Positions 4,786 to 37,872 of a DNA stretch of 64,000 nucleotides are shown here, in pieces (position 1 is the first letter of the stretch; each line of letters starts with the position of its first letter). A model generated the notes under the pieces. That model was not told the origin of the DNA and made no database searches. It saw only the letters and a program-made list of their open reading frames with translations. The stretch comes from Ascidiella aspersa (taxonomy: Eukaryota): positions 16,554,001-16,618,000 of the forward strand of contig OZ004608.1 of assembly GCA_963924565.1 (NCBI GenBank), in the 5' to 3' direction. The position numbers were made by a program, and so were the translations under genes.

Positions 4786-6303
4786 TTATTGCTCGATCAC
4801 GGCAACATTTTCGTTGCTCGTCTTTCCTCGCTCGCTTGACGACTGGCTGCCCGACTTTTGCGAGCTGCTCACCGACCACACGAAAGTTTCTTGTGGACTC
4901 TTATCGGCCCCGGGGGTCCTGGGTGTGTCGACGCGGCTCCCGCTAAACATGGACGCCTGCCTCGGGCTGCGGGACAGTCCTTCGTTGCCCGAGATGTCAC
5001 CACGGGCATTTGGATTCTTTATCCAAGGAGAGCACATCGCGAATACCCGGGGTCTCCAATCACGAAAGGTTCCAATGAGGGTAACGAGGTTGATGAGGAT
5101 GTTTGCGTCAAACACTAGGGTCGGTGCGATGTTGTACTGGTCCTTCACAAAGAGGATGAGAATCGACGCGCCTATGTCGGTGAGAATACAAATGCCTGCC
5201 GTGATGGTCGCTCGCTTGATCAAAGACATAAATCCCCGGCTTTTTGCGGCCTTCGAGTCCATCGTATTACGGTGTTTCACTAGCGGGTAAATAAAGAGGC
5301 CAAATAGAAGGGCCTGGAAGGCGACTGTTGAAACTGTTATGCAAATCCATGCGATGTAGTCGGGTATAACACTCTCCGACAGCAAACAGCCTTTGGGTGT
5401 CAACCGGTAGAATCGCGTGGTCGTAAAGAGGACTGTGCATCCCACCTCGGCAATGAAGATAAAGATTAGCGAGAGTGTGCTGACCACCTAAATAAGATGC
5501 AAAAAATAAGTCGCTTACTGCCACTTTCCCACTTGAACACACTTCACTATCTCGCAACCCAACTTCGCTATCGTGTACCCATAAGCCTTTAAATCAAACA
5601 GACGTATTTACTTTAACAATTTTATGCTTTAAGTTGCTAAGAAATGCGTGACATCTCTTCGAGGGAGCAGACGTGCGATCAAACTACTTTAATGCTCAAT
5701 ATATCGTATTGGTGGTGGGTTAATGATTTGTCGCATTTCTCAAAGATAGTTGTATTATTACACTTTATTAAGCGTATTAGCATCGACAAAATTTTTAATG
5801 ATAATCGTTTAATATACCTTGATGACGGGCGAGGACAAATGTTTCATCGACGGATCCGAATAGAAGAAGTTCTGTCTGGTCCACAGAAAACCATAAACAC
5901 ATGAAATGCAAACGGCGGTGAGGATAATCTTCAGCTTCAGAACCGTGTTGCAGTAATCAGAGTTATAAGTTTCAAGATATTGAGCCAGCAGCTCGTAATG
6001 TTCGCAGATAAAACGTGAAAGGAGAAACAGTGCGGCCAGCAGGGATTCCACCCTCATTACCATTGCGTAAGTGTGGCTCTTGTTCACTTTGTGCTTAAGC
6101 TTACGCAGTGAGCCCATTCTTCGGTTTTTGGGACGCTTGCATTCGTAAACAGCGAAGTTTACAACAATGTACAAAGTCACCAGAGTGAAAAACGATACAG
6201 AAGCCTCCAAGACGATAAATCTCGTCATATCGAACTCTTGTACATAAGTTTGACTTGCATTCGTAAAGGTGGCGTTGAACGTTACCGTTTCGGTCGTCGC
6301 CAT
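4786..6303 (-). CDS. Orphan 7TM receptor #1, two exons (6303-5818, 5487-4786), 395 aa
   Basis: ORFs 5809..6303 and 4786..5487 join in phase 0 (AAG|GTATAT ... TATTTAG|GTG). Seven hydrophobic segments, N-terminal NxT/S sites, a TM3 Cys, an ECL2 GC, and family motifs LWTRQNFFYSDPSMKHL, FQALLFGLFIYPL and FRDWRPR. Confidence 0.9.
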
Positions 6304-8170
6304 AATATCCTTGGGACGGGACTGTCTTTATTACTCAAGCGTCTTTATTACAGATGCTGTAATACTGCAACACCGGCTGTATTCAAAATGTAGCTTGAAG
6401 GTGCGCTTTCTACCCAAGCGTGCTAAGCCCTTGTAAACGGATTGGCTTTGTTGACAATTTTTACTCTATCCGTTACTTCTGTTGCTGGATTAGTCACCTC
6501 GAGGCTCGCCTGTTTGTCAGTCAGAATGTCGCGTCGCCCTACTGACGCACCTTGTCGAGCCGGCGATTGTTAGATTGCGCTTGTTCGAGGCTCTGCAGAT
6601 TCTAATTACCTTGTCCGTCGTGATTCGAGTAAATACGTGCTAACTCGTTTGCACTCTACGGTGTATTTGAAACTGTAAAACAAGAGTGCTAGTTAATTCA
6701 AAAACCAAAAATATAGTCTATTCTTCAAAGTTCGAAACTTTGGCAATATACATCCTGCTTTGAAATAAATGTTTCTTACGTTGCTGTACAAAAATGATTA
6801 AATTTGTAAATAAACACCTATATGTATGCATATTTATAAAGGTTTTTTATGTAAAAGTTCTACTGTAAATTACATTCTTTAGGTCAATAGTTTTTAACTA
6901 ATAAATAGTTAAAATTTTTAAAACGATTCTGCATATTATTTTAGCAAAAATGACCTCAAAATTGTAAGTATAATCTTAAACTTAAAGCCATACGCCAAAA
7001 ATCGCATGCTGATCTGCAAACGAATGTTGCTAGTGACACTAATACAAGAACGTGATCAAACATTCTTTGCAAACACCGCGACTTACAGAATGTATAACGA
7101 CACGGCTATCTGGTTCTTTACTCTCTACTGCCACTTAAATGACATAATACACGGAATCAACGCAGCGAGGACAAACAACTGTCAAGCGCCCAAGCGGGCA
7201 GTGATTCTTAATGATTTAAACTCCATACGTGCAGTCGTTCACTCAACACAGTCATTTTGTCGTTTGAGCAAAAAAACTTTGCGCCCTAGGCTATTCTATT
7301 GTCCAAAAAATCTATCAACCTTACTCGAACTATACAAAGGTTGGGCAGGTTTTAATCCGCCTTGTAACGAGATAATACCTTTCTCGTAAAACTATACGGT
7401 AGATTTATCAATAACCTGCTGTCTTTTTTCGTGTAAACAAATAATTAAATGTTGTAAGCCATAAGTTTTAATTGACATCCACAAACCGCGAAATAATTAT
7501 TTAAAATGTTTATTGAACTTAGTTTTTTGTTAAACCAGTATTATTTACCATCACGAACTCGGCGTTCAGTAGTGCAAGTTCACCTTCTTGTAATCTTTAC
7601 GAGAAGAAGTTTTAATCCTGTGTTGGAATGTATGTGTGATTAACTTGGGCCTATTATGTACTGTAATTCGGATTCAACCTTAGCGGTAAAAAATACATTT
7701 TACATTACATTCCAACTTAAACGGGTTGATCAAATCGAAATTTGTTGCCATTTATGTCTATTATTTAGGCACTAAACAACAACTAGAAGCTATAATAATT
7801 AAACAATTTTTTGTCTGAAACATTTTGGTTAAAAAACAGAATATATTCATTTAAAGGCAGTTAATTTGGTAATCGTAAAGTATATAATTGATTAGGTTAC
7901 TGAATAAGTTTTACAATCATTGCACTAATTAAAAACTGTTAATCGTTTGTACCGCAATATTTATGGTAATTCGACTCAGTTAAGATTTTATTTTGTTAGA
8001 TATAATTCATTTATCCGAGGTCGCTCACAGGTGACGCTGTGATTCATAAAATTAACAAAAGGGTAGCGTCACTGTTCGTGGAGCAGTACACATATGATCA
8101 CTTTACAACGACTAAGTGATTTAGTGCGATTGCCATGCGTCCATTGATAAACAGGTGTCTAATTGATTAA

Positions 8171-9178
8171 ATGTTTTCAGCAACTTCCGTGAGTACTTTT
8201 ATCGGCAACGAAAATGAGACGGCTACAGACGAATTTTTTGGAATTAGCATCGGTGCATTGGCCACCAACAGCGTACTTTTGCTTATGTCTTTTTATATTA
8301 CGACTGCACTGGCGGTCTATGAGTATAAATGTATCCTAAAACCAAGTAAAAGTCCGCAAACGTCAAGCAGAAGTAGTCAACTACCTCACTGGTCGAGACG
8401 TTTATGCTTCATAGGATCTGTGACGCTACTGATCCGGATTATTTTAGAAGTGATAGAGAACAGGTTCGGAATGAATTCGGACGTCGTTTGTCGAGTCATC
8501 CGGCCAACCAAGTCGGTACTGCATTTTTTGTTGGTTTCCTGTGTTTATCTTGTGCTATGGTTGCGCCAGAGGATGTTCTATAGCACACCTGTCATGGAAT
8601 ATTTGACCAACAAGTTCGTGCGATTCTTCAGCGCTTCCCTCCCGGTTATAATCCTGCTCACAAACGGCATCACCGTTTTACTAGACGTTACGACAAGAAA
8701 ATACACAAGCTCGTATCGCGGTTGCGTGGTCGAGTGGAGCCTTATATGGAAGAAGCTACCAGGCATATTTCTCTTTGTGTCGGGGACTTTTTTCCAGGCC
8801 ATTCTCTTGGGACTGCTTATATACCCTTTGGTAAAGCACCGCGACGACTCCCATGCCGCGAACGTGAGAGGCAGAAGAAAAGAGACGGCGGTCGTGCGTC
8901 GGGTAACAGCGGCGGCCGTCGTAACCGTGCTAATCGATGGCGTGAGTGGTTTAATTTCAATCACTGTGCTCTCTGGGTCTCTGGGGGTACTAAGGGCAAT
9001 GTTGTACGACCTCAACATGATGGTGGCGCTTCTGTGCGTCGTACTCAGCTTTGCCGATTGGCGGAAGAGGCTGTTTCCTTTCCACACCGAGGCCGATTCA
9101 AAAAGAAAAAGAAAATCGTCTAGCATGTCCGCACAAAGCGGCGGAAGCGGCGTAGTGACCGATGGATCGCGTTTGTGA
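8171..9178 (+). CDS. Orphan 7TM receptor #2, intronless, 335 aa; head-to-head with #1
   Basis: Seven hydrophobic segments; motifs LWLRQRMFYSTPVMEYL, RGCVV, FQAILLGLLIYPL and FADWRKRLFP are shared with the other three genes. Confidence 0.92.
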   Translation: MFSATSVSTFIGNENETATDEFFGISIGALATNSVLLLMSFYITTALAVYEYKCILKPSKSPQTSSRSSQLPHWSRRLCFIGSVTLLIRIILEVIENRFGMNSDVVCRVIRPTKSVLHFLLVSCVYLVLWLRQRMFYSTPVMEYLTNKFVRFFSASLPVIILLTNGITVLLDVTTRKYTSSYRGCVVEWSLIWKKLPGIFLFVSGTFFQAILLGLLIYPLVKHRDDSHAANVRGRRKETAVVRRVTAAAVVTVLIDGVSGLISITVLSGSLGVLRAMLYDLNMMVALLCVVLSFADWRKRLFPFHTEADSKRKRKSSSMSAQSGGSGVVTDGSRL

Positions 9179-16690: not shown

Positions 16691-19196
16691 ATTCGACGCA
16701 ATTATTGTTTATTATTAAGTCCAGCGTTAAACGTAGGCTATATAAATTTATTGTGAAAGTGTAAGATGTTTTTCACCTATTTACGTAACTAAATTAAGGT
16801 GCATATTTGGCAATCCACTCATAGGGGTGCAATTTATTCACCCACAATACATGAGTGGAAAATATCCACCATATGCTATTCAACCTACACACTTTACAGT
16901 TTGTGGCCTTACCAGTTTCGAAATTTGGTACTGCCCATGAGCACGTCGGACTCGGGACTCAAGTAGGCCTACTTACTGAAGTCCTGAATCCCGAATCCGC
17001 ATTCAACAAAACAACCTACTCCGTCGAGTCCCGAGTCCCAACCCTATACTTTAATAAACAGTAGCCCACACAGCAATTGTACAACAGGTAGAACAAACAT
17101 AGCAAGAATATAAAAGCCCATCAATTTAAAAATATCGAAAAAGATATTTGAAATTTTCAAATGAGAATCCACAAGAATTCAAAATATCACTCGGCACCCT
17201 TGAGCGATAAAAACGACACCCAAGGGTGCCGTGGAACTCTAGTAAGCCTACATAAATGAACGAAATAGCCTTTATGTTTCTACGGTTTCACTTTTCAATC
17301 TGGCGGGCAGATCATTCCGCAAAACCTTTCGAACATTGATTTGTTGTTTTAGTTTTAGATTTCTACCAAGAGATTGGTAAGAAGCGGCAGGATACCATGT
17401 TGCAGTAAATTTTACCTTGCTTTTTTAAAATAAGTTAAATAGCAACCAAAAGACGTTTTACAAAAAACTTCTAAACCAGTGTTTTCCCAACCGGGGTTCC
17501 CTGGCAACTTTATGTGCCGTATCTAATGCTCCAGGTTGCCGATTGATATTTGGAAATCTTAAAGAATATAATTTTCGCTAAAGTAGTAATCCTCTTGATA
17601 CAATTCTTTGTGTAAGATAAGAATACAATAAATCAAGTGGTATTTTTCTACATTGTGTAAAGTCGATGTTTGTTGTTTCCGCAGCCTACCGTCTGTTGTA
17701 ACATTATGCTAAATTTGCAATCTATTTACTTTTTCTAAAGGGTTCCGCAAGCCATAAAAGGTACTGTACCAAGAAAAACAGTACCTTTCATGTACTGTAC
17801 CAAGAAAAACGTTGACCTAAATACGTGCCCCTTAGCATGATATTTATCAATACAGATTCAATAAGGAAGCAAAGCGTTATGCAGTTAGTCATGCCTAAAC
17901 GTGATGTCATCACAATAGAAAGCAACGGCAACCGACGCAAGAGTTATTCAAAATATTTCGAGGTGGTAGGATTTAGTAGTTACGAAACTTAGTAGTGCCA
18001 ATGACACATAGGGCCTATTAAGAATAACTACTTTTAATACTTAAAACTTCATAGGTAGCCTAATGCAAAGAGGCTATCAGTTTGAAATAGTAAGGTAGTC
18101 TGTAGGCCTACATATCTGTTTCAATAAACATTGGCTTAAAAAGTTATACATAGATTATCCTGAAGTTTTTTAACCTCGCTAAAAGTTAATGCTTATTATA
18201 ACAAAACATTTTAAACTGAAGAATAAATGTGATTTAAATATAGTCGGTCTAATGCTGGTGTATGTCATAAGTTCATTTGTAGCGTTGATTTAAATTTTAT
18301 TTAGGTAAAAACTATTGCTCGTACTTAGAGATAGTTATCTTAGTTAGGACTTATTTAAATATTTAACTAACTGCTGGATATCCTGCGCTTGGTAATCGGT
18401 AGTTCGAATAGAATACCTTTTTATATTGCCTCAGAAGTAAAATATATCAATATAAACTTATTGATAAAAGTTACAGAAGTAAAATATATGGAACACATTA
18501 AACACTTGTTTTATTAAAACTAATACTTGGACTTTTAGACCATTTTAATAGATAAGCCCATTGAGAAATGTTTACCCCGTCGAGGTCAATTTAAATTCAG
18601 ACAATCTTGATGTCTGTTGACGTGTTCCATACAGCAAAGCCATGGCAAAAGACGTTTAAGTTTTTTCGGCAATTTGTTGACGGAAAACGGCTAACTGGAA
18701 TGTAGGGAATAATGCAGCACGTCTAGGAAGCAGGTTACTAATAGTATAACAGTTGGGCCGCATAAAAATCAGTTGGCACATAACAATAGCAGTGGAAAGT
18801 TAGACAGCAAGTGGAATTAACTTTGTTAAATAGCCCAAAGCATTGACTATAAGGGGCGCCACACACACGTCGATGATTGCACGTAGGATCGAGGAAAGTA
18901 AAAAACATCTGGAGGTCCACGCATAGGCAAAACTAGTATGCTAATGTGATACAACTATAGTTACTAGAGCACTGGTGAAATTCACAAATTAACTATAAAT
19001 CCGCGTCTTGTCATAGATATTCGTGAGCCTTTGTAAAAACTTAGTTTCATTGTTTGGCACATAACTAAGCAAAAAGGATAAATAGGAAGTCATAAAGCTT
19101 ACGTAGCATTTGTACAAAAACGAAATCTGTTTTTTAAAACTACTTTTTTTAGGTGAACGTTTTATGAAAATTCGCAAAAGTGTTTTATATAGAGTT

Positions 19197-20273
19197 ATGA
19201 ACACTGTGGACTTTGAAGTTACCGCTAGAATGTTTCCGAACAACACGACATCTCAAGCTGAACTAACCTCAATCAAAAATACTACATCCTACGACGGGCA
19301 GTTGATTGGTGCTCTGGTGCTATGCACTGTGACGCTGATTGCCACCATCTATCTCACAACCGTGCTTGTGATTTACGAAGTGAAGGTCAGGCAGAAGAAC
19401 AGAGATAGTCTACCCCTGACCCGATCGCGTTGCCAATCCAGGTTGGTGAGAGACAAGTGGGCGGATTGGATGCGGCTGCTTTCTTTGATTGGATGTGCTA
19501 CCCTCCTGTGTCGCGTGCTCATTGAAACTGTCGAAATCCGCCACGGACAGGGCTCCGACGAGGTTTGCGCAATTATCCGGCCTGTGAAGGCGTTTCTACA
19601 GGCGACGGTGGTGACGTGCATCTACTTGGTGTTGTGGATACGACAGCGCAAGTTCTACAGCCTGCCTGTAATGGAACATCTTACCAACAAGTACATTCGC
19701 TTTCTCAGCAGCTCGATTGTCGTGATAATGGCCACGGCCGACGCCGTTACAGTTTGCCTTTACATCTTTACACGAAAGTACACGGATTCGGAACGTGGAT
19801 GTGTGGTCGATTATAGCCTCGTCTGGAAAAAACTTCCGGGACTGTTTATGTTTCTGTCCACTGTGCTGTTTCAGGCAATCTTGCTTGGGTTGCTGATTTA
19901 TCCACTTATCAACCACAGGCGCAGTATTCAAGTCCAGAGCACCGCACAGCGGCGCGAGATTGTGCTGATACGAAGAGTGACCGTCGCCGCACTTGTAACG
20001 GTCGCCATCGACGGTCTTTCCGGGTTAATTACGATCACGGTACTCTCTGGCTCCTTTGGTATCTGGCGACCGCTTCTCTACGACGTGGATATGTTCGCGG
20101 GACTGTTCTGTGTGAATCTAACGTTCAACGATTGGAAGATTCGATTTTGGCCCTGTTTTGCTGACAGCAAGGAAGTGAGAGGCACACTAAACCAAGTGTA
20201 TAGCAACATGGAAACAGAATTTACGAACACAGTTGATGGGACGACAACCACCGGGATGGATGGCGCCGCATAG
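19197..20273 (+). CDS. Orphan 7TM receptor #3, intronless, 358 aa from the MNTVD start (alternative in-frame ATG at 19164)
   Basis: 7TM pattern with LWIRQRKFYSLPVMEHL, RGCVV, FQAILLGLLIYPL and FNDWKIRFWP. The MNTVD ATG is conserved in paralog #4, whereas the 19164 ATG is ACG there. Confidence 0.9.
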   Translation: MNTVDFEVTARMFPNNTTSQAELTSIKNTTSYDGQLIGALVLCTVTLIATIYLTTVLVIYEVKVRQKNRDSLPLTRSRCQSRLVRDKWADWMRLLSLIGCATLLCRVLIETVEIRHGQGSDEVCAIIRPVKAFLQATVVTCIYLVLWIRQRKFYSLPVMEHLTNKYIRFLSSSIVVIMATADAVTVCLYIFTRKYTDSERGCVVDYSLVWKKLPGLFMFLSTVLFQAILLGLLIYPLINHRRSIQVQSTAQRREIVLIRRVTVAALVTVAIDGLSGLITITVLSGSFGIWRPLLYDVDMFAGLFCVNLTFNDWKIRFWPCFADSKEVRGTLNQVYSNMETEFTNTVDGTTTTGMDGAA

Positions 20274-20687
20274 AATTATTCACAGATATTCTGTTATTTA
20301 TCTGGTGCGGCGATTGTTTTCATTGTGCCAACAATAACTAACCTAAATATATTGATTACAATTACAGTGTGGCTTCGTACCGACACATATTTAATTGAAG
20401 ATCCAGGCACAAACGTTTCGGTGAGATTTGTGCTATTTGTTGTTTGGTGTTATAAAATGTATATATAATGTGCCTATTCGTTGATTTTAGAAAACCACCC
20501 ACGCCTACATGCTTGCTCGTCCAGCCAATTAAAGCATTCGAAGCGTGTCACCAATAATAAACTTTAGTTGGATACATTTTAAGTTTTTGGGGAGAGACCC
20601 GTGTAGGAGAGCGCGTTTTTGAATTGTTAAACCTGAAGTACCCGATTGGGCGTCTGCGCAGGCCTGGACGCGGAAGTAGACGCTATA

Positions 20688-27332: not shown

Positions 27333-27909
27333 ATTTAATCTTTAATGTTTCTGACAAAAACTTGTTTTTTCGTGGTGGAGTTACGTCACACTCCGACTAT
27401 GATATCAATTGAACTGTTAAGTACAATAAAAGGGCCAATCGCGAAGATTGGGTTTGGGCCCTGGGGGCAGTTCTATTCACTATAAATGAGTATAACTGAC
27501 CCTGGGGGTCCTAGCCAGATGTTGCCAAAAATTCCCCCAAAAGATCGACTTTTTGAAAGAATTTTTTTTTTTGCCATCTAATTTATCAGCTTTACCTATA
27601 TACCCTACCTAGACCTGCTCCTTCCTCTCACTCCCCTTTTCTCCCTTTAGCACCTTTGGTTGGCAAGCGGTGATTGAATTGGCCCACACCCTACAGTGCG
27701 GCACTACAGCTGTACAAACTTCTAAATATAGTCTGCTGCCCGACACTAACAGCAATCAGTACAGAAACTTGTTATTAACAAGCATCGAGCCAGCGACGAT
27801 CACCAAACATGATCAGGCTTTTACATTTGATTTAAAAAAGGAAATTTTTCATTCACTTTACCATTTTTAACAATGGAAGCCGGGAAATAAACTAAAGTTT
27901 ATTACTCCA

Positions 27910-30900
27910 TGTAATGATTTATGTTTCTATTGTTGACTCTGATTTCTATGCTATCTGCTTCTGTGCGTTTCTCCTTTCTTTTCCTTGCCTCTCTCCGTAA
28001 TTATCATTATACGTCCCGCGTCTTGTTACATTCTTCCCTTCCCTTTATAACTCGTGTAGCTTTACTGTGCTTCGTCAGTCTTTGTCAGTTTCTCTTATTG
28101 GGTACTCTTTTATATTCGTTACTAATAACGTTCTTTTTGTTACAGCACTCTATGTTGTAAATTGTTGATTAAAGCTATAGTAAACGAACTTGACGACGTT
28201 TATTGTTAGTTACTTCAATTTAATCAACAAAATTTTCCATGATGGAAAACCGACAACTTTTGCGGCCTAAAACTTTGACGATCGAGCCCGAAGCTCCTAA
28301 TGCTGCTCGACACTTCGCGTATTGGTTACGCTCCGTTAACGACTTTATCGACCATCTCGACGAAGGCGATAACACCACTTCCGCTGCAAACAGGAAGCGC
28401 TTCATAGTCAACTGTTTATCTCCGGATATATTCTCTTATGTAGAGGATGTTGACTCCTTCGAAGAAATCGTCAGTACATTAAAACAAATGTACGTGAAGA
28501 AGAAAAATAACGTATTCGCTCGCTATATACTTGTAAGTCGTCATCAAGGCCCCGACGAGACACTCGCGGAGTATTTGCGGGAACTTAAACTTTTAGCGAA
28601 GGATTGTACTTTTCTTCCAGTATCGGCTCATCAATACAAAGACGATCTTACCAGAGATGCGTTTATAAACGGTCTTTCGGCTCCGTTCATCCGTCAACGT
28701 CTCTTGGAAATAGAAGATCTTGATTTAACTAAGGCTTCTCAGCTTGCTGAAAGCCTGTCCAAAACGCAGCAGCAGTCTGTTTTGATGGGCAAGACAATTC
28801 CTTCTATGGCGTCTGTTCCCGCCTTTAAAGAGCTGGAAAGCGACGGGAATGGAAGTACCGCCACTTCTTCCGAGTCTATTTCTCTGGCAACGGCTGACAG
28901 AAGCTTAAAAGCCAAAGGTAACTTGTGCTATTTCTGCGGTGGTGGACAGCACAGCAGCCGCGCGACCTGTCCTGCCCGTAACGCTACTTGTTACCAATGT
29001 GGAAAAAAGGGACACTTTTCACGAGTCTGCCAGAGTCGTTCTTCGTATTCCTCCCGCCGGGTGAATTCACGACCCGCGTCTCCGACCGCCGTTGGTTCTT
29101 CCATGATTTCTGGTCATCTTCCGCCCTCGTTTCTGGCCGGTGCTCCTTCCTGTCTGGGTCCTGCGTTAGTCGATGCGACTTTACAATCCACTCCGGTCCA
29201 AGTTTTGATCGACTCCGGGGCTTCCGAAAACTTTGTCAACAAAAGGTTAGCCACCAAGCTTCGTCTGAAGACCTTCGGACCCCACTCCTCCGTTTCCATG
29301 GCCTCCTCCCGTCTCTCTATCGCTACTTCGGGAAGAACCACCGCTACCATAGCCCTACTAGGTCGATCATACATCCTAACCTTTGGTGTTTTAGATGACC
29401 TTTGTGCTGACGTTGTTCTCGGTCAGGACTTTCTGAAGAAACATGTCGAGGTTAGTTTCTTCCTGGGTGGACCGGAAGCACCCCTGAAAATTGGATTCAA
29501 TGATTTCTCCCACCTTTCTTTGGCCGTCGCTGACTTAAACCCCCCTCGCCTATTTGAGTTTTTGCTTCCAGGTTGTACTCCCATAGCTGCACGCTCTCGT
29601 CGATATAGTAAAGAAGACTGGAATTTTATCAATGATGAGATCCGGCGTCTCTTGGAGTCTGATATTATAGAACCTGCTCGTTCTCCTTGGAGAGCTCCTG
29701 TACTAGTGGTCTCTCGTGGTAACAAGAAGAGACTGGTTGTCGACTACTCTCTCACCATAAACCGATTCACCCAGTTGGACGCCTATCCATTGCCGAAAAT
29801 TGAGGAAATAGTAAACAAGGTCGCTCAAGATAAGTTCTTTAGTTCGCTCGACCTGCGTTCCGCTTATCATCAAGTTCCGTTGTTACCTGGGGAGCGACAC
29901 TACACGGCTTTTGAGGCTGGCGGAAAACTGTATCAATACAAACGCCTGCCGTTCGGCGTCACTAATGGGGTCGCCGCGTTTCAGCGCGCTATTGACGAGT
30001 TTATTGAAGCTAATAAGCTGAAAAAGGTCTATGCCTATCTCGACGACATAACTGTAACGGGTTCGACTTTGGAGGAACATGACAGCAACCTTCGAGCTCT
30101 ACTTCAAGCTGCTGCTCGGCAGAATCTCACTCTTAATGAAGAGAAGTCAATGATTCGCCGTACTTCTTTAGATTTCCTGGGATACCGGATTAGTCAAAAC
30201 AAAATACAGCCGGATCCTCAACGTCTACAGCCTCTTCTCGAGCTCTCGCCACCCACGTCACCCAAAGCCTTGAAACGCGTCTTGGGGATGTTCTCCTACT
30301 ACGCTAAGTGGATCAAGGACTTTTCTCGTCGCGTACAGCCGTTGCTCACTGCAAATCGTTTTCCTCTGAATGAGACGGCCGTCCGTTCCTTCCGTGATTT
30401 AAAGACTGAGCTCGAAAGGATAACTCTTGGGGCTGTTCGCGACGGCGTTCCCTTCGAGGTGGAAACCGATGCTTCCGACTTCGCTATTGCTGCAGTTTTA
30501 TCCCAGAACGGGCGCCCTGTAGCTTTTATGTCACGTACTCTTAGCAAGTATGAGCGGAACTATCCTGCTATTGAGAAGGAAGCGACCGCCATTGTCGAAG
30601 CAGTCCGCAAGTGGGCTCACTTCCTAAAGGGCCGTAGTTTTACTCTCATCACCGATCAAAAGTCTGTGTCCTATATGTTCGACCGAACCAATCGAGGTAA
30701 AATTAAAAACGCCAAGATCACTTCGTGGAGGCTAGAGTTGGGTCAATATTCTTACGATATCCGTCATCGCCCTGGTGTTCAAAACGTGGTCCCCGACGCT
30801 CTATCACGGGTATGTGCTTTCACAGGTTCTACGCGAAATCTTGAGGAGTTGCATAAAGCGATGGGACATCCGGGATACGCCCGTATGTATCACTTCATAA

Positions 30901-32202
30901 AAAGTAAGAACCTACCGTTCACTCCCGAGGAAACCAAAGCCGTCGGGCGGAACTGTCGCTCTTGCGCCGAACTAAAACCACGTTTCTACAGACCGGAACC
31001 TCGGGATCTGGTAAAAGCAACGAGATCGTGGGAGCGACTGAGCATAGACTTCAAGGGTCCTGTACAGGGACCGAATCCGTACCTTCTAGTGCTAGTTGAT
31101 GAGTATAGTCGATATCCGTTTGTTTTTCCTTGCAGAGACATGACGTCCCGCTCCGTCATCGAGTGTCTCTCCGTCCTCTTCTGTTTATTTGGTTTTCCCG
31201 AATATATTCACAGTGATCGTGGGACCTCTTTTATCAGCAAAGAAACTCGTCAGTTTCTTACTACTCGGGGCATTGCAACGAGTAAATCGACACCCTATCA
31301 TCCACAAGGTAATGGTCAGTGCGAAAAGACAAACCAAACGGTTTGGAGAACTATTAAACTTCTCCTTCACAGTCGTGGTCTGTCAGGCAACCGCTGGGAG
31401 GAAGTGTTGCCAGAGGCTCTTCACGCTATTCGTTCGCTTCTCTGATTCCTCCGTTTCCCGAGACGAGCTTTAACCGGAACCGCTATGCCTTCGTGGCTAC
31501 TTAATCGAGGTGTTGTTCTTTTACGTAGGTTTGTTCGAACCAAGGGAGAGCCCCTGTGTGATCCTGTCACATTGCTCGACGCGAATCCATCCTACGCCCA
31601 TGTTCGGTTTTCTGATGGGCGCGAAAGTACAGTCTCTACATCCGACCTCGCTCCGTGTCCTGGTTCTCCTGAGTCGCTCCATGACGCTTTTCCCCCTCGC
31701 GACGCCGAAACCTCTCGGACCTCTGAAGGCGAGGCACCGGTACCGGTTGAAGATGAACCGACCTCTGAACCCGCCCCATCTCCTGGAGACGAAGTACCTC
31801 TCCCCGACATCCGACGATCGGGTCGTGAACGTCGGGCTCCTGTCCGCTACGGAGACTGGACTGTCTGAAGGGTCTTTTATCTAGAAGGGATGAATGTAAT
31901 GATTTATGTTTCTATTGTTGACTCTGATTTCTATGCTATCTGCTTCTGTGCGTTTCTCCTTTCTTTTCCTTGCCTCTCTCCGTAATTATCATTATACGTC
32001 CCGCGTCTTGTTACATTCTTCCCTTCCCTTTATAACTCGTGTAGCTTTACTGTGCTTCGTCAGTCTTTGTCAGTTTCTCTTATTGGGTACTCTTTTATAT
32101 TCGTTACTAATAACGTTCTTTTTGTTACAGCACTCTATGTTGTAAATTGTTGATTAAAGCTATAGTAAACGAACTTGACGACGTTTATTGTTAGTTACTT
32201 CA
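27910..32202 (+). mobile_element. Ty3/Gypsy LTR retrotransposon (Mag-like gag), full length, very young
   Basis: 308-bp TG...CA LTRs at 27910-28217 and 31895-32202 that appear identical; 5-bp TSD CTCCA; PPT AGAAGGGATGAA (31883-31894); PR-RT-RH-IN domain order. Confidence 0.97.
28239..31445 (+). CDS. Gag-Pol polyprotein in a single ORF; integrase truncated by an in-frame TGA, with the same frame continuing to 31868
   Basis: Zn knuckles CYFCGGGQH...C and CYQCGKKGHFSRVC; protease LIDSGAS; RT LPFG and YLDD; RNase H ETDAS; integrase HHCC and IDF...SDRG...E. Confidence 0.95.
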   Translation: MMENRQLLRPKTLTIEPEAPNAARHFAYWLRSVNDFIDHLDEGDNTTSAANRKRFIVNCLSPDIFSYVEDVDSFEEIVSTLKQMYVKKKNNVFARYILVSRHQGPDETLAEYLRELKLLAKDCTFLPVSAHQYKDDLTRDAFINGLSAPFIRQRLLEIEDLDLTKASQLAESLSKTQQQSVLMGKTIPSMASVPAFKELESDGNGSTATSSESISLATADRSLKAKGNLCYFCGGGQHSSRATCPARNATCYQCGKKGHFSRVCQSRSSYSSRRVNSRPASPTAVGSSMISGHLPPSFLAGAPSCLGPALVDATLQSTPVQVLIDSGASENFVNKRLATKLRLKTFGPHSSVSMASSRLSIATSGRTTATIALLGRSYILTFGVLDDLCADVVLGQDFLKKHVEVSFFLGGPEAPLKIGFNDFSHLSLAVADLNPPRLFEFLLPGCTPIAARSRRYSKEDWNFINDEIRRLLESDIIEPARSPWRAPVLVVSRGNKKRLVVDYSLTINRFTQLDAYPLPKIEEIVNKVAQDKFFSSLDLRSAYHQVPLLPGERHYTAFEAGGKLYQYKRLPFGVTNGVAAFQRAIDEFIEANKLKKVYAYLDDITVTGSTLEEHDSNLRALLQAAARQNLTLNEEKSMIRRTSLDFLGYRISQNKIQPDPQRLQPLLELSPPTSPKALKRVLGMFSYYAKWIKDFSRRVQPLLTANRFPLNETAVRSFRDLKTELERITLGAVRDGVPFEVETDASDFAIAAVLSQNGRPVAFMSRTLSKYERNYPAIEKEATAIVEAVRKWAHFLKGRSFTLITDQKSVSYMFDRTNRGKIKNAKITSWRLELGQYSYDIRHRPGVQNVVPDALSRVCAFTGSTRNLEELHKAMGHPGYARMYHFIKSKNLPFTPEETKAVGRNCRSCAELKPRFYRPEPRDLVKATRSWERLSIDFKGPVQGPNPYLLVLVDEYSRYPFVFPCRDMTSRSVIECLSVLFCLFGFPEYIHSDRGTSFISKETRQFLTTRGIATSKSTPYHPQGNGQCEKTNQTVWRTIKLLLHSRGLSGNRWEEVLPEALHAIRSLL

Positions 32203-35200
32203 CTCCATTTCAAGATTATAAAAACCACTAGATTCTCCAAGAAAATCACTAAACCACTAGATTATTTCAAAAACCACTAAATCTAGTGGAAAACCACTAG
32301 GAGTGGCAGCCCTGGCCCCTGATGTATTTTGATTTTTGAAATCGTAATGGTACGAAACAACAGGGTTAGTTACGTAACAATGAATAGGCTTCAAATTGGC
32401 AAAAAATATAAATAATGGCCTCGTGCCCAGTTTGTTTTGATGATTTGCGTTGGGGGTTCGGATCTGGCCTTCGGGCCGTAAGTTACCCACCCCTGATTTA
32501 ACCGGTCAAATACTCATATTGGAAGCAAATGTTGTAAATTTTATCAGGCTTGTTTTGTGATTTGAGTTAAAATCAAAATAATGACTTCAACACACAATGC
32601 TGCATACTTATACCAATATCTAGTATCATTGCTTATACTTGAGATTTTTAAGCTGTGATGAGGAGTTAAAACATTTGTTTTTTGCTTATACATTTACTTG
32701 CTGTTAAATTTCGTTAAAAACTTGTTGGCTTAACTTTGTGGTTGAATAGTACTACGGTATAAATGAATATAATATTGCTTGTAAGATGGACATAGTTTGC
32801 AATGATTCCTATTGATGGTCAAAAAATAAATGTTTTCTGTTTGACAACCATGTTACTTAAGCTAAGATTAAGGTTACCACCAAGGTTTATTTTTAATTTG
32901 AAATGCATTTTGTTAGTGTCTAGTATTTGACCTATTTGACGAGTATTTGACCGGTCAATTGACTGGATTTTATTTGACTGGTCTAATGCCCAAGCCCGAC
33001 CCTGTGAAAAACCATTGCTTACCATTAGTGGTACGCGTACCACAGGTTGTGAACCCCTGCTGTAGTGCGACGGCCCCGGTAAGGCCGAATGTCTTGAGTC
33101 GAGCCTCATCGCAGGCTATGTTGTTTACCTGGCCTGGCCTTGCTTGTACAAAATCCTAAATTAATCAACTGATTTCGGTTATCCCTTTAGAAGGCTTCCG
33201 GTTAACTATAATGTTGTCTTATATTAGAAATTGTTGCGGCAAAACAACCCCAGATTTTCATTGAATCAAGATTGTAATATATTTCCATAACTAAACATTT
33301 GTTGTTTTCAAAGGTCGGTCCGCGATAAACGAAACATTTTTAACTTTAGATCATCGTCGACAAATTTATGGCCATCTATAGGTAACGGAAAACAGTTCAG
33401 AAGCTTGGCGGATCTTAGATTTTTGTTCGGGGACCATACATTTTTAGGAATGTTACAAAAGCTACGTCAAAAAACAAAAGTCTTTTAAAACACCAGTTGT
33501 CATCTGGCAAACTTGTGCGCAAAAAAATATGCAGCTGAAAACTAATCTAATGTCAAACAAAGCGCGAAAAAAAATGCGTTTATTTGGTTTGAATGACTGT
33601 GCTTGTAACCTTCTTTAACAGCCATTGCATTTCGTCGACTTTATGATCTTTGAGCTGAATAAATTTGCTTTAACACGAACAAATACACAAAAAAAGACAG
33701 AAGTTAAAAATATAGGTAAAACCTGTGTAAGATCCAAGATATAAAGGTAAACCACCATAAGTATCAAATAAATTGCAGATATTTGAAAAAAAATATGCAT
33801 AGACTTGTGAAGTAGACAAAGTTATACATTGTTGCGGATTGCCAAAATTGAAATGCATTATACACAGGGACGTGCAGTCAGGAGAGGCAGGTGAGGCAGT
33901 GCCAACATCTGGCAAAGCAAAAGATATATCAAGCAAAAGTTATATCAGTTAATCTCTACCGCAAATTTTACGATTCTATACCTAAAGCGTGCTTTATTTT
34001 TTTTCTTCTATTTTGTTGCGTTATCCGTAGCAAGCGTTCACGCGGTCAAAATCACTGAAATACGAGAAGAGAGGCAGCGCCAAACCGTGCCTCTCTTCAG
34101 GTCACAGAATGCCATACACTGCATTATGCGTGCCTTTTTCTTTCTCCAATTCTCTCGGAAAAACATGATGAACGATTTAGCTATGATTTGAGGCATGCCT
34201 CAACCTCAATTATGACGTCCACTCTATGAAACCTTTCTTTGTGCAGCTTAAATGCCGGCATAGTGCGTGTACATTGACTTCTCGTAGTGTAAAGCTCTAG
34301 AGTTGAAGTCATAAATAAAAGCAGACCTATTGCACATTTAAAAGTTTTGCATCAGACGACTGGACAAAAAAATAACACGCAACTCTCTTGGTAAAAAAAA
34401 GAGATTGGTAAAAAAGGAGTGGATGCTGTGTGGCTGTTACAGGCGTAGCCAGGGTGGCCATGGCCACCCCAAAATGTTATAAATAGTGTACTCTTAATAA
34501 TAATTTGTTTTGTAGCTTTTATGAGCAGTACCACAACAGTCCATCACAGGCGTGCCACGCCATCAAATGTCATGCACTGTTACGTCATAAAAGATGTAGT
34601 CATTATTACGTTTGCTATATTAATGTGGTTTTACTACTGTACTTTTTGGTGATTTTGTTATTGCTCTCTGGATATTTTTTGAGTATTGCGCTAAAACTCA
34701 GTCAGTTGCTGCTCGAAACAGTTTGCCAGCATATTTATTTGTGTTCGATACGCAGTTTATACAATGGCAAAAGCTAAACAAAAAGAGTTCAAACTTTCTT
34801 TTTATTTTTATTCTTACTATACCGTTTTTTTCATTTTCAACATATTCGAAACGTTCAAAATGCTACCTACTTCTTTCGGCTTTGATATTCTTATTACGTC
34901 TTACTACAACCTCCAGCACTTATGCTCCAAGGTAGAGCAGAAAGATATTCTTGATTTGTTACACTCCAATCGAAAAAATATATTGTAACAAGAAGCTCAC
35001 CAATAAAAATGGAAATCTCAAGATTTTGAAATATCTCTCGGCACCCTTGAATAGCCAAGAAAATGTTGGTCTGAATACGTGCCCTTTAGCATGGTATTTA
35101 TAAATACAGATTCAATAAGCAAGCAAAGCGTTATGCAGTTAGTCATGCCTAAACGTGATGTCATCACAATAGAAAGCAACGGCAACCGACGCAAGAGTTA

Positions 35201-36172
35201 TTCATAATATTTCGAGGTGATATAATTGATAGTAATAGTTAGAAACTTAGTTACCAATAACACGTATTAAGAATAAATACTTTAATACTACTCAATTGGT
35301 AATACAAAGAGGGTATCAGTTTGAAATAGTTAGGCAGTCTGTACATATCTGTTTCAATAAACATTGCCTTAAAAGTTATAGGCCTACACAAGTTATCCTG
35401 AAGTTTTTAACCTCGCTAAAAGTTAATGCTTATTATAACAAAACATTTTAATTTGAAGAATGTATCTGATTTAAATAGTCGATATAAAGCTGGTGTATGT
35501 CATAAGTTCATTTGTAGCGTTAATTTAAATTTTATTTTGGTATTAATCATCACTATTGTTCGTACTTAAAGATAGTTCTCGTAGGACTTATTTAAATATT
35601 TAACCAACTGCTAGATATCCTGCTCTTGGTAATCGGTAGTTCGAATAGAATACCTTTTTATATTGCCTCAGAAATAAACATATTGATAAAAGTTACAGAA
35701 GTAAAATATATGGAACAAAATAAACACTTGTTTTATTAAGACTAATAGTTGTACTTTTAGACCATTTTAATAGATAAGCCCATCGAGAAATGTTTACCCC
35801 GTCGAGGTCAATTTAAATTCAGGCAATCTTGACGTCTGTTGACGTGTTCCATACAGCATGTCATGGCCAAAAAAATCGGTAATTTGTTGACGTAAAACGG
35901 CAAACTGGATTGTAGGGAATAATGCAGCATGTATAGAAAGCTGGTTACTTATAGTTTAAAAGTTAGTCCGCATAAAAAAAAAACAGTTCGCATATAATAG
36001 TAGCAGTGGAAAGTTAGACAGCAAGTGGAATTAACTTTGTTAAATAGCCTAAAGTATTGACTAGGAGCGCCACACACACGTCGATGATTGCACGTAGGAT
36101 CGAGGAACGTAAAAACATCCGGAGAATTATGCAAGGCTGAAAATGAGTAATACACTTTTATATTCCTTACGT

Positions 36173-36530
36173 CAGGGGTGGGCAACATACGGCCCGCGAG
36201 CCAGATCCGGCCCGCCAACGCAAATCATGCGGCCCTCGACCTATCTTACAAACTGGGCTCGAGGCCATTTCTCATGTTTTTGGTTTTTAAACTGCGCAAA
36301 TTTTTTTGGTGCTTTATGCAAATCTTGTTCCTGCATCGAATGTAAAGTGTAGTTTAGACCCATTTTCAACTGCACAATAGCATACCCTAAAAAGTGTTAT
36401 CCCCGATAACAGTCGTTAATGATGCTTGTTATAATAAGAGGGGTAAAGTCTATACACATTTATATTTTAACGGCCCCACCTTTCTGAGTTTGGTTTTGGC
36501 CAGCGACTAGAAAAAGGTTGCCCACCCCTG
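36173..36530 (+). mobile_element. hAT MITE ~265 bp upstream of the 7TM #4 start; absent upstream of #3
   Basis: TIR CAGGGGTGGGCAAC/GTTGCCCACCCCTG; perfect TSD CCTTACGT. Confidence 0.9.
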
Positions 36531-36795
36531 CCTTACGTGATGCATTGCATAGACAAAACTATAGTAAGCTAATGCGATACAACTATAGAGCACCGGTGAA
36601 ACTCACAAACTAACTATAAATCCGCGTCTTGTCATTTATTTGGGCGAGCTTTTCTAAAAATTTATTGTTATTTTTTGTCACACAACTAAGCAAAAAGTTT
36701 ACGCAGCATTTGTACATAAACGAGAGGTGGTTTTAAAACTATTTTTTTTAGGTGAACGTTTTACGGAAATTCCCAAAAGTGTTTTAAATAGACCA

Positions 36796-37872
36796 ATGAA
36801 CACTGTGGACATGGACGTTACCGCTAGAATGTTTTCAAACAACACGTCATCTCAAGCTGAACTAACCTCAATCAACAATACTACATCCTACGACGGGCAG
36901 TTGATTGGTGCTCTGGTGCTATGCACTGTGACGTTGATTGCCACCATCCATCTCACAGCCGTGCTTGTGATTTACGAAGTGAAGGTCAGGCAGAAGAACA
37001 GAGATAGTCTACGCCTGACCCGATCGCGTTGCCAATCCAGGTTGGTGAGAGACAAGTGGGCGGATTGGATGCGGCTGCTTTCTTTGATCGGATGTGCTAC
37101 CCTCCTGTGTCGCGTGCTTCTTGAAACCGTCGAAATCCGCCACGGACAGGGCTCCGACGAGGTTTGCGCAATTATCCGGCCTGTGAAGGCGTTTCTGCAG
37201 GCGACGGTGGTGACGTGCATCTACTTGGTGTTGTGGATACGACAGCGAAAGTTCTACAGCCTGCCTGTAATGGAACATCTCACCAACAAGTACATTCGCT
37301 TTCTCAGCAGCTCGATTGTCGCGATAATGGCCACGGCCGACGCCCTTACCGTTTGCCTTTACATCTTTACTCGAAAGTACACGGATTCGGAACGTGGTTG
37401 TGTGGTAGATTATAGCCTCGTCTGGAAAAAACTTCCGGGTCTGTTTCTGTTCCTGTCCACTGTGCTGTTTCAGGCAATCCTGCTTGGGTTGCTGATTTAT
37501 CCACTCATAAAGCACAGGCGCGGTATTCAAGTCCAGAGCACCGCACAACGGCACGAAATTGTGCTGATACGAAGGGTGACCGTCGCCGCACTTGTAACGG
37601 TCGCCATCGACGGTCTTTCCGGGTTAATTGCGATCACGGTACTCTCTGGCTCCTTTGGTATCTGGCGACCGCTTCTCTACGACGTGGATATGTTCGCGGG
37701 ACTGTTCTGTGTGAATCTAACATTCAATGATTGGAGGATTCGATTTTGCCCCTGTTTTGCTGACAGCAAGGAAGTGAGAGGCACACTAAAACGAGTGTAT
37801 AGCAACATGGAAACAGAATTTACGAACACAGTTGATGGGACGACAACCACCGGCATGGATGGCGCCGCATAG
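36796..37872 (+). CDS. Orphan 7TM receptor #4, intronless, 358 aa; paralog of #3
   Basis: Same length as #3, with ~20 aa differences by manual count (~94% identity). Confidence 0.9.
   Translation: MNTVDMDVTARMFSNNTSSQAELTSINNTTSYDGQLIGALVLCTVTLIATIHLTAVLVIYEVKVRQKNRDSLRLTRSRCQSRLVRDKWADWMRLLSLIGCATLLCRVLLETVEIRHGQGSDEVCAIIRPVKAFLQATVVTCIYLVLWIRQRKFYSLPVMEHLTNKYIRFLSSSIVAIMATADALTVCLYIFTRKYTDSERGCVVDYSLVWKKLPGLFLFLSTVLFQAILLGLLIYPLIKHRRGIQVQSTAQRHEIVLIRRVTVAALVTVAIDGLSGLIAITVLSGSFGIWRPLLYDVDMFAGLFCVNLTFNDWRIRFCPCFADSKEVRGTLKRVYSNMETEFTNTVDGTTTTGMDGAA

What the first reader, a model, noticed from the sequence alone, without database searches (positions are those of the whole stretch)
4786..37872. 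Cluster of four non-canonical orphan 7TM receptors: candidate lineage-specific chemoreceptor family
Seen: four genes share a distinctive signature: YxxLWxRQxxFYSxPxMxxL at TM3/ICL2 in place of DRY, FQAxLxGLxIYPL in TM5, (Y/F)D in TM7 followed by FxDWxxR in place of NPxxY, and the TM3 Cys / ECL2 GC pair. They are mostly intronless, tandem, of mixed ages (highly diverged to ~94% identical) and lie in a TE-rich, duplicating region. Established: this birth-and-death pattern typifies chemoreceptor families, and ascidians lack vertebrate-type olfactory receptor repertoires. Inference: an undescribed expanded sensory or ligand-receptor family.
Basis: partly seen in the sequence, partly recalled or inferred. 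Interest (0 to 1): 0.75.

Follow-up and report, generated by a model that had tools for sequence, protein, structure and literature searches.

The report
Sea-squirt orphan seven-helix receptor genes
The window holds four working genes of a very large seven-helix membrane receptor family seen so far only in sea squirts; its function is unknown, and it has been proposed, but never tested, as these animals' missing smell and taste receptors.

Summary
Four paralogous genes lie at 4786-6303 (-, two exons), 8171-9178, 19197-20273 and 36796-37872 (+). All carry the reported motifs. Each has seven hydrophobic segments, an N-terminus with glycosylation sequons, and a Cys pair at the top of TM3 and in ECL2.

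They belong to a large family. A profile search of this genome gave 123 matches, and only 121 of 257 candidates were scored. A library of 1.84 billion representatives gave 569 hits. Of 30 representatives sampled, 11 carry a name, and all 11 are tunicates.

No Pfam family is reached. Profile-profile comparison with this genome's own class A receptors gave 1.4% probability, against 100% for the control.

The copies are under purifying selection: dN/dS is 0.28 for the 94.4%-identical pair. Gene A is transcribed.

Conservation is concentrated on the predicted cytoplasmic face, as expected of a signalling receptor with a variable ligand side.

A chemosensory role is untested. B/C/D and A fall in two subfamilies that also contain Ciona and/or Clavelina proteins.

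A 2020 Ciona paper (PMC7397655) already noted such a tunicate-specific 7TM family.

The parts
5818..6303 (-). Gene A, exon 1: ATG at 6303, N-terminus with 2 NxS/T sequons, TM1-TM3 and the LWTRQNFFYSDP motif. The donor GT follows 5818.
   Evidence: ORF. Splice site. Profile match to positions 1-152, E = 6e-39. RNA-seq depth over 5727-6531.
5488..5817 (-). Gene A intron: 330 nt, phase 0, GT..AG.
   Evidence: Sequence. RNA depth is 0 in 5566-5726 and 0.14 in 5405-5565. Homologues align across the junction. No spliced read was listed; too few reads were laid.
4786..5487 (-). Gene A, exon 2: TM4-TM7, the GC of ECL2, FQALLFGLFIYPL, FRDWRPR, a Ser-rich tail and the stop codon.
   Evidence: profile positions 152-306, E = 4e-53. 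RNA depth over 4922-5404.
8171..9178 (+). Gene B: single exon, 335 aa, 7 hydrophobic segments.
   Evidence: E = 3e-105. No RNA reads in the sampled run.
19197..20273 (+). Gene C: single exon. The frame is open from 19110. The ATG at 19197 (MNTVD) is the one shared with D.
   Evidence: E = 4e-109.
36796..37872 (+). Gene D: single exon, a recent duplicate of C. 94.4% aa identity, dN/dS 0.28.
   Evidence: E = 2e-107.
17800..20304 (+). Duplicated block holding gene C and about 1.4 kb upstream of it. Its partner is 35055-37903.
   Evidence: Self-BLAST: 85.0% over 1136 bp and 91.8% over 1386 bp.
35055..37903 (+). Duplicated block holding gene D and its upstream region.
27909..32202 (+). Context only: a Gypsy-type LTR retrotransposon between C and D, with 309-bp LTRs that are 100% identical and a 1068-aa gag-pol ORF.

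Best explanation
The four genes are functional members of a very large orphan seven-helix receptor-like family seen so far only in tunicates.

A belongs to one subfamily. B, C and D belong to another. Both subfamilies are shared with other sea squirts.

Likely mechanism:
- The protein sits in the plasma membrane with a glycosylated N-terminus outside.
- A disulfide between the top of TM3 and ECL2 braces a variable outer pocket that binds the ligand.
- The strongly conserved cytoplasmic ends form the interface to an intracellular transducer, most probably a heterotrimeric G protein. These are LWxRQxxFY after TM3, YPLxKH after TM5, R at the start of TM6, and FxDWxxR after TM7.

Shown here: topology, Cys pair, the conservation pattern, purifying selection, family size and taxonomic range, and transcription of gene A.

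Inferred: surface location, G-protein coupling and ligand binding.

The ligand class is unknown. An external chemical cue is one candidate.
For: Topology
- Gene B has seven hydrophobic segments.
- K+R makes up 23.4% of the predicted inner loops against 7.9% of the outer ones.
- 69 of 79 members have an N-terminal NxS/T sequon.
- C107 and C185 are invariant in 79 of 79 members.

Conservation
- It is 0.50-0.64 in the inner halves of TM3, TM5, TM6 and TM7.
- It is 0.29-0.45 in the outer halves.
- Inner against outer columns gives Mann-Whitney p = 0.0016.

Selection
- dN/dS is 0.28 for C/D.
- It is 0.17-0.46 in 6 further paralogue pairs.

Family size
- 115 matches with protein B.
- 123 with the profile. 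Only 121 of 257 candidates were scored, and the weakest listed match has E = 8e-20. 102 of the 123 have no internal stop.
- 24 of the matches lie within C5:21.85-22.04 Mb.
- 569 representatives at E <= 1e-3 in the library of 1.84 billion.

Range
- 11 of 30 sampled representatives are named, and all are tunicates: Clavelina 4, Ciona 4, Styela 3.
- names only Ciona intestinalis, C. savignyi and Clavelina.

Trees
- B+(C,D) has support 99. It sits inside a clade with support 97 that contains Ciona and Clavelina proteins.
- Both exons of A fall in one clade with support 96 that contains Clavelina P0025.

RNA
- 24 reads were laid on the exons of gene A.
- All have the first mate on +, which in most stranded libraries means the RNA is from the minus strand.

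Literature
- A Ciona 7TM of a tunicate-specific family concentrates at the exposed apical tip of papilla cells that express PLC-beta and the IP3 receptor (PMC7397655).
Against: - No direct evidence of G-protein coupling or of any ligand.
- No match to any GPCR model reaches threshold. 0 of 79 members reach Pfam's cut-off for any GPCR family.
- hhalign against this genome's class A receptors gave 1.4%, 1.4% and 0.9% probability.
- A profile search of PDB sequences found nothing significant. The best hit is rhodopsin at E = 0.16, and it is out of register.
- The class A motifs DRY, CWxP and NPxxY are absent.
- Gene B had 0 RNA reads in the about 6% of one run that was read.
- My helix boundaries were set by hand from hydropathy, so the inner/outer test depends on them.
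Confidence: 0.72

Rival explanations
1. The family is specifically the tunicate chemoreceptor repertoire, detecting external cues such as settlement or food chemicals. It would replace the vertebrate-type odorant receptors that tunicates lost. The four genes here would be such chemoreceptors.
For: - The family is large, mostly single-exon and arranged in tandem arrays. 21 of 123 matches carry internal stops, and some copies are recent duplicates.
- The outer face is variable and the inner face conserved.
- Bulk RNA signal is low or absent.
- The 7tm_4, TAS2R and 7tm_7 models gave 0 matches in this genome. These searches had no positive control.
- Niimura 2009 found 0 odorant receptor genes in Ciona and Oikopleura and suggested that other families take over (PMC2817399).
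- Johnson et al. 2020 proposed exactly this for their tunicate-specific 7TM family.
- A 2026 paper shows taurine chemosensing by papilla neurons with the receptor still unidentified (PMC12922724).
Against: - No expression data from sensory cells for this genome, and no ligand.
- The four genes of this window lie in subfamilies shared across sea squirts, with only 2-3 named copies per species visible. C/D has dN/dS of 0.28 with changes scattered along the protein. This is not the fast-turnover pattern.
- The one characterised Ciona member is in contractile, non-neuronal cells.
- The 2026 taurine paper favours neurotransmitter-receptor homologues as candidates.
Confidence: 0.3
2. The family is an extremely diverged branch of rhodopsin-like (class A) GPCRs. 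The conserved subfamilies in this window would serve endogenous ligands such as tunicate-specific peptides, lipids or amines.
For: - The TM3-ECL2 Cys pair and an Arg at the cytoplasmic end of TM3 resemble class A.
- A Tyr-Pro ends TM5. Any resemblance of this to class A is my recollection only.
- 1 of 79 members (P0058) gives a sub-threshold 7tm_1 match. It has E = 5.6e-5 and 23.2 bits against a cut-off of 30.5. The matched stretch (residues 175-312 against profile 107-249) runs roughly in helix register.
- UniRef labels P0008 and P0157 'family 1 profile domain-containing'.
- Both subfamilies have members in other sea squirts.
- Ciona is known to have lineage-specific peptide GPCRs (PMC6475428).
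Against: - hhalign of the family, and of P0058+P0053 alone, against own-genome class A receptors gives 0.9-1.4%. Class A halves find each other at 100%, E = 1e-44.
- 78 of 79 members give no 7tm_1 hit.
- UniRef labels another member (P0009) 'family 3', so these automatic labels disagree.
- The Ciona peptide receptors of PMC6475428 are 21-26% identical to vertebrate class A receptors by BLAST. This family has no such hits.
Confidence: 0.25
3. These are seven-helix membrane proteins that are not signalling receptors, for example transporters, channels, scaffolds or enzymes. The GPCR-like features would be superficial.
For: - No sequence or profile link to any GPCR family.
- The nearest named clusters in the ESM Atlas are fungal DUF7703 membrane proteins, at only 0.85-0.86.
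Against: - N-out topology with glycosylation sequons, the extracellular Cys pair, basic conserved cytoplasmic helix ends and Ser/Thr-rich tails (21% against 16% for the whole protein) are typical of receptors.
- Expansion to over a hundred tandem copies with variable outer faces is unusual for transporters or enzymes.
- The Atlas scores are below the 0.9 level that the tool calls more than a lead.
Confidence: 0.1
4. The open frames are not real genes: they are chance ORFs, pseudogenes or cargo of transposable elements.
For: The region is rich in transposable elements and recent repeats. Gene B has no RNA reads.
Against: - All four have intact frames, with homologues in other sea squirts at 39-51% identity.
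- dN/dS is 0.28.
- Gene A has RNA-seq cover on the direction expected for a minus-strand gene, and an intron-shaped gap.
- No repeat ends flank the genes apart from the C/D duplication itself.
Confidence: 0.02

Closest known systems
Tunicate-specific orphan 7TM family of Ciona KH.C3.516 (Johnson, Razy-Krajka and Stolfi 2020, EvoDevo 11:15, PMC7397655)
   Same: The paper's description fits. The proteins are 7TM, have no BLAST hits outside tunicates, have many paralogues in several tunicate species, and include tandemly arrayed copies. The paper proposes them as tunicate chemosensory receptors (passages read). Our family has Ciona, Clavelina and Styela members, all annotated as uncharacterised.
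   Different: Identity of the two families was not tested by sequence. The paper gives no motifs, counts or subfamilies.
Rhodopsin-like (class A) GPCRs, Pfam 7tm_1 (PF00001)
   Same: Seven helices, N-terminus outside, the Cys pair at the top of TM3 and in ECL2, a conserved Arg at the cytoplasmic end of TM3, conserved cytoplasmic helix ends, and mostly intronless genes.
   Different: No DRY, CWxP or NPxxY motif. 0 of 79 members reach the Pfam cut-off. Profile-profile probability is 0.9-1.4% against 100% for the control. None of the 57 PF00001 matches in this genome coincides with a family locus.
Lineage-specific chemoreceptor expansions (vertebrate OR/TAAR/V1R/T2R, nematode serpentine receptors, echinoderm and lophotrochozoan class A expansions)
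   Same: Over a hundred mostly single-exon copies in tandem arrays, recent duplicates beside old ones, some broken copies, and a variable outer half.
   Different: No sequence relation was found. No expression in sensory cells and no ligand has been shown. The subfamilies in this window are shared across sea squirts rather than species-specific.
Ciona-specific neuropeptide GPCRs (Ci-LF-R, Ci-YFV-R and others; PMC6475428)
   Same: Lineage-specific receptor clades in a tunicate.
   Different: Those receptors are 21-26% identical to vertebrate class A GPCRs by BLAST. This family has no detectable relatives outside tunicates.

Membership tests
Tunicate-specific orphan 7TM family (KH.C3.516 type, PMC7397655) | Seven predicted transmembrane helices | tested here: met
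   The hydropathy scan finds 7 segments in gene B. C, D and the two exons of A are homologous to it. The positive-inside rule holds, 23.4% against 7.9% K+R.
Tunicate-specific orphan 7TM family (KH.C3.516 type, PMC7397655) | No significant similarity outside tunicates | tested here: inconclusive
   All 11 named of 30 sampled representatives are tunicates. No Pfam or PDB hit. But 19 of the 30 carry no name, and 419 of the 569 hits were not listed, so non-tunicate members are not excluded.
Tunicate-specific orphan 7TM family (KH.C3.516 type, PMC7397655) | Many paralogues, some in tandem arrays | tested here: met
   115 and 123 matches in this genome, both lower bounds, with dense clusters on C3, C5, C6 and C8.
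Tunicate-specific orphan 7TM family (KH.C3.516 type, PMC7397655) | Sequence similarity to KH.C3.516 itself | not testable with these tools
   No tool gave the sequence.
Class A rhodopsin-like GPCR (Pfam 7tm_1) | Match to the 7tm_1 model above its cut-off | tested here: not met
   0 of 79 members are above 30.5 bits. One (P0058) reaches 23.2 bits, E = 5.6e-5. The 10 further representatives and the two exons of A give none.
Class A rhodopsin-like GPCR (Pfam 7tm_1) | Profile-profile similarity to class A receptors | tested here: not met
   hhalign gave 1.4%, 1.4% and 0.9% and 0.9%. The control, class A half against class A half, gave 100%, E = 1.2e-44. The class A profile was built from only 11 receptors of this genome.
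Class A rhodopsin-like GPCR (Pfam 7tm_1) | DRY at the end of TM3, CWxP in TM6, NPxxY in TM7 (motif definitions recalled, not from a call) | tested here: not met
   The family consensus has LWxRQ, no W/P motif in TM6, and FxDWxxR.
Class A rhodopsin-like GPCR (Pfam 7tm_1) | Cys pair at the top of TM3 and in ECL2 | tested here: met
   C107 and C185 are invariant in 79 of 79 members. That they form a disulfide is inferred.
Any GPCR class | GPCR-type seven-helix bundle fold | not testable with these tools
The ESM Atlas holds no model of this protein.
Other GPCR and chemoreceptor Pfam families (7tm_2, 7tm_3, Frizzled, Dicty_CAR, nematode Sr families, TAS2R, V1R, 7tm_4, 7tm_6, 7tm_7) | Match to the family model | tested here: not met
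   None is among the 25 families that one search lists, out of 120 families matched by any of the 79 members at E <= 10. The only such hit elsewhere is Srsx at E = 0.68 in P0135.
Chemoreceptor (functional class) | Large lineage-specific expansion in tandem arrays with gene birth and death | tested here: met
   21 of 123 matches have stops inside, two of which are the gene A exons. Recent pairs have dS 0.09-0.57. For the four genes of this window the turnover is modest.
Chemoreceptor (functional class) | Expression in sensory cells and response to external chemicals | not testable with these tools
   Only one bulk RNA run of unknown tissue was available. Gene A had 24 reads and gene B had 0.

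The most novel reading that the evidence does not exclude
The family is a receptor class of its own that arose or diverged beyond recognition in the tunicate stem lineage. It cannot be assigned by sequence to any of the five main GPCR families. It serves as the tunicates' chemosensory repertoire after the loss of vertebrate-type odorant receptors. The subfamilies shared across sea squirts, as in this window, would detect cues common to all of them, such as settlement or conspecific signals. The species-specific arrays would track local chemistry.
Probability: 0.22. Interest if true: 0.8.

Novelty: new member of a known kind. Interest (0 to 1): 0.48.

Why it matters
- Vertebrate-type odorant receptors are absent from Ciona and Oikopleura (PMC2817399).
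- The receptor for the larval attractant taurine is unidentified (PMC12922724).
- The GPCRs upstream of the Gq/Gs signalling that starts metamorphosis are unidentified (PMC12176390).

This family has more than a hundred surface-receptor-like genes, no Pfam model, and only 'uncharacterized protein' labels. It is the obvious candidate pool for these roles.

This report adds to the one-paragraph mention in print:
- a motif and topology description;
- a lower bound on copy number in one genome;
- a negative, controlled test of class A membership;
- evidence of selection and transcription;
- the observation that some subfamilies are shared across sea squirts, which makes them good first targets for finding ligands.

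Settlement of sea squirts is also a fouling and invasion problem, so their settlement receptors have practical interest.

Tried and rejected
Searches and tests that led nowhere
- Pfam gave nothing at E <= 10 for the four genes. It gave nothing for 10 own-genome paralogues or 10 long or distant representatives.
- The profile against PDB sequences gave only an out-of-register rhodopsin hit at E = 0.16. P0058 alone against the PDB gave 0 hits.
- The second and third homologous-protein searches returned only 5 proteins (with alignment A2) and the query itself (with P0058). They added nothing on names or range.
- The ESM Atlas gave unnamed chordate clusters, one with the automatic name 'Serpentine receptor class gamma' at 0.97. 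Among named clusters it gave only fungal DUF7703 at 0.85-0.86, which is a lead only. No Pfam Srg hit backs the automatic name.
- I followed the single 7tm_1 hit (P0058) as a possible bridge to class A. It was not corroborated by hhalign (0.9%), by my local class A HMM or by the PDB search. I leave it as an unconfirmed hint.
- P0145 (744 aa) looked like a member with a large extra N-terminal domain. Its first roughly 350 residues have no start Met and look like read-through of a gene caller, so I rejected that reading. The long representatives instead carry inserts in ICL3.
- Searches for 7tm_4, TAS2R and 7tm_7 in this genome gave 0 matches. They had no positive control, so they do not prove absence.

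Literature
- Seven searches found only PMC7397655 describing such a family.
- 'tunicate-specific' plus '7TM' is held by that one paper alone.
- KH.C3.516 is named in 3 records, which are that paper and a 2024 paper with its preprint, where it serves as a cell marker only.
- The 2008 Ciona GPCR census lists 169 GPCRs. Its section on specialised tunicate GPCRs names only a cAMP-like and a Methuselah-like receptor (PMC2396169, abstract and section 11).
- PMC9238270 was read in passages and is not relevant.
- Subscription journals are not covered by the library.

Limits of the RNA evidence
- No spliced read of gene A was listed. The run had 24 reads on the stretch, 4 of them only partly on it. The intron therefore rests on splice signals, the gap in depth and homology.

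Full report
WHAT IS THERE

The window carries four paralogous genes.
- Gene A is on the minus strand. Exon 1 is 6303-5818, the intron is 5817-5488, and exon 2 is 5487-4786.
- Gene B is 8171-9178 (+), 335 aa.
- Gene C is open from 19110. The first ATG shared with D is at 19197, and the gene ends at 20273 (+).
- Gene D is 36796-37872 (+).
- A profile built from 79 family members finds exactly these five coding pieces in the six-frame translation of the window, at E from 6e-39 to 4e-109. It finds nothing else at E <= 1.

Across 79 aligned members, C107, W130, C185 and P219 (gene B numbering) are invariant. L129, Q133, Y137, S154, G184, L215, R244, F294 and W297 are at least 90% conserved.

GENE MODELS

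B, C and D are single exons. Gene A has one intron:
- The donor is AAG|GT after 5818 and the acceptor is AG|GTG before 5487. The intron is 330 nt and phase 0.
- Both exons match the same homologues in collinear order, for example Clavelina P0025 at residues 21-162 and 165-359.
- In an RNA-seq run of the same species label, 24 reads lie on the stretch. They cover 4922-5404 and 5727-6531. Depth is 0 in 5566-5726 and 0.14 in 5405-5565.
- All reads have the first mate on the + strand. In most stranded libraries this means the RNA comes from the minus strand.
- No spliced read was listed, because too few reads were laid.
- Gene B had no reads in the about 6% of that run that was read.

TOPOLOGY AND CONSERVED FACE

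- Gene B has seven hydrophobic segments at about 25-52, 78-96, 113-131, 153-171, 199-217, 249-267 and 277-295.
- 69 of 79 members have at least one NxS/T sequon before TM1.
- Lys+Arg make up 23.4% of the predicted inner loops and 7.9% of the outer ones. The N-terminus is therefore outside and the C-terminus inside.
- The two invariant Cys sit at the top of TM3 and in ECL2.
- Conservation is highest in the inner halves of TM3 (0.64), TM5 (0.62), TM7 (0.53) and TM6 (0.50). It is lower in all outer halves (0.29-0.45).
- Inner against outer columns gives Mann-Whitney p = 0.0016. I set the helix boundaries by hand from hydropathy.

This pattern is the one expected of a signalling receptor: a fixed inner face, a braced ECL2 and a variable outer half. 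That it couples to a G protein is an inference.

THE GENES ARE FUNCTIONAL

- C and D differ at 20 of 357 residues (94.4% identity). dS is 0.093, dN is 0.026 and dN/dS is 0.28, with the changes spread along the protein.
- Six other recent paralogue pairs in the genome give dN/dS of 0.17-0.46.

SETTING

- C and D lie in a duplicated block, 17800-20304 against 35055-37903, at 85-92% identity.
- A Gypsy element with identical 309-bp LTRs and other 97-99% repeats lie between and around them.
- A and B are head-to-head, with their ATGs 1.9 kb apart.

SIZE AND RANGE OF THE FAMILY

In this genome (308.6 Mb, 75 contigs):
- Protein B finds 115 places at E <= 1e-3.
- The profile finds 123 at E <= 1e-5. 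Only 121 of 257 candidates were scored, and the weakest listed match still has E = 8e-20, so the count is a lower bound.
- A few genes appear as two matches. 21 of the 123 have stops inside the match, two of which are the gene A exons.
- The matches form dense arrays. For example, 24 lie between C5:21.85 and 22.04 Mb.

In public data:
- Gene C finds 569 representatives (50% identity clusters) at E <= 1e-3 and 175 at E <= 1e-10.
- I sampled 30 of the 150 listed. 11 carry a name, and all 11 are tunicates: Clavelina lepadiformis 4, Ciona intestinalis 4, Styela clava 3. All are 'uncharacterized' or 'unnamed'.
- adds Ciona savignyi.
- The other 19 sampled have no name, and 419 hits were not listed. 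Members outside tunicates are therefore not excluded.

WHERE THE FOUR GENES SIT IN THE FAMILY

I built a FastTree of 113 rows and an IQ-TREE 'quick' tree of 51 rows.
- B+(C,D) is one clade with support 99.
- It sits inside a clade with support 97. This clade also holds two Ciona intestinalis proteins, one C. savignyi protein, two Clavelina proteins and unnamed proteins.
- Both exons of gene A fall in another clade, with support 96. It contains Clavelina P0025, which is 51% identical to exon 1 and 39% to exon 2.

So the window joins members of two subfamilies that are shared among sea squirts, with local duplication. The bursts of near-identical copies are elsewhere, for example the C6 arrays. 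The rows were chosen from the best hits, and both trees are rooted at the midpoint only.

IS IT A KNOWN KIND OF RECEPTOR?

By sequence, no.
- No Pfam model is reached by the 79 aligned members, by 10 further representatives or by the two exons of A.
- The only GPCR signals are 7tm_1 in one member, and Srsx at E = 0.68 in P0135.
- The 7tm_1 member is P0058, at E = 5.6e-5 and 23.2 bits against a cut-off of 30.5. Residues 175-312 match profile positions 107-249.
- hhalign of the family against 11 class A receptors taken from this same genome gives 1.4%.
- Against two halves of that set it gives 1.4% and 0.9%. The two halves find each other at 100%, E = 1.2e-44.
- P0058+P0053 alone give 0.9%.
- None of the 57 PF00001 matches in the genome coincides with a family locus.
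- The family profile finds nothing significant among PDB sequences.

What remains class A-like is the Cys pair and an Arg at the inner end of TM3. I therefore do not file the family under class A. A very remote relationship is not excluded.

WHAT IS IN PRINT

- Johnson, Razy-Krajka and Stolfi 2020 (PMC7397655; passages read) found Ciona KH.C3.516. It is a 7TM protein 'of unresolved phylogeny' with no BLAST hits outside tunicates. At least two similar genes lie in tandem, and many relatives occur in other tunicates.
- KH.C3.516 is the second most enriched transcript in papilla axial columnar cells. A GFP fusion concentrates at their exposed apical tips.
- The description fits our family.
- My seven literature searches found no other description.
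- Niimura 2009 reports 0 odorant receptor genes in Ciona and Oikopleura (PMC2817399).
- Ascidian larvae sense taurine through papilla neurons, with the receptor unknown (PMC12922724, abstract and Discussion).
- The GPCRs that drive Gq/Gs signalling at metamorphosis are unknown (PMC12176390, passages).
- In this genome, 7tm_4, TAS2R and 7tm_7 gave no match, but those searches had no positive control.

EARLIER NOTES OF THIS SCAN

Three other windows of the same genome were already reported as clusters of this family, with the same paper cited. Those notes gave me the lead to a '2020 Ciona paper'. I then found and read the paper myself.

VERDICT

- The reading 'expanded, lineage-restricted receptor family' is supported.
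- 'Undescribed' is probably not right.
- 'Chemoreceptor' is plausible but untested. For these four genes the sharing of their subfamilies across sea squirts makes a conserved ligand at least as likely.
- The finding is a new set of members of a barely described family. It is interesting mainly because that family is still uncharacterised, and less so because this scan has now met it four times.

Noticed in passing
window 38731-39873 (-): A single open frame of 380 aa with a full MT-A70 adenine methyltransferase domain (Pfam E = 1e-39, residues 195-367). It lies about 0.9 kb downstream of gene D on the other strand.
   Followed up: no
window 27909-32202: A Gypsy-type LTR retrotransposon with 309-bp LTRs that are 100% identical and an intact 1068-aa gag-pol frame at 28239-31445.
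   Followed up: partly
window 6046: All 4 RNA reads covering this place read C where the window and the DNA contig of run X1 read T. On the minus-strand transcript of gene A this is A to G, at a third codon position. It could be a difference between individuals or RNA editing. There are too few reads, and the samples differ, so it cannot be decided.
   Followed up: no
   Followed up: no
window 41032-42965: A nest of direct and inverted repeats of about 320-530 bp at 88-97% identity.
   Followed up: no
proteins P0047, P0066, P0107, P0109, P0121, P0135, P0154, P0145 and its cluster: The long database representatives of the family match the profile in two pieces, split after TM5, with about 30-175 extra residues between them. 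So a branch of the family has a greatly lengthened third inner loop. The extra N-terminal 350 residues of P0145 look like gene-caller read-through.
   Followed up: partly
G000 C3:31038491-31099436: Seven family matches that each cover only profile positions of about 10-247 or 76-232. This suggests an intron-bearing or truncated branch arrayed on both strands.
   Followed up: no
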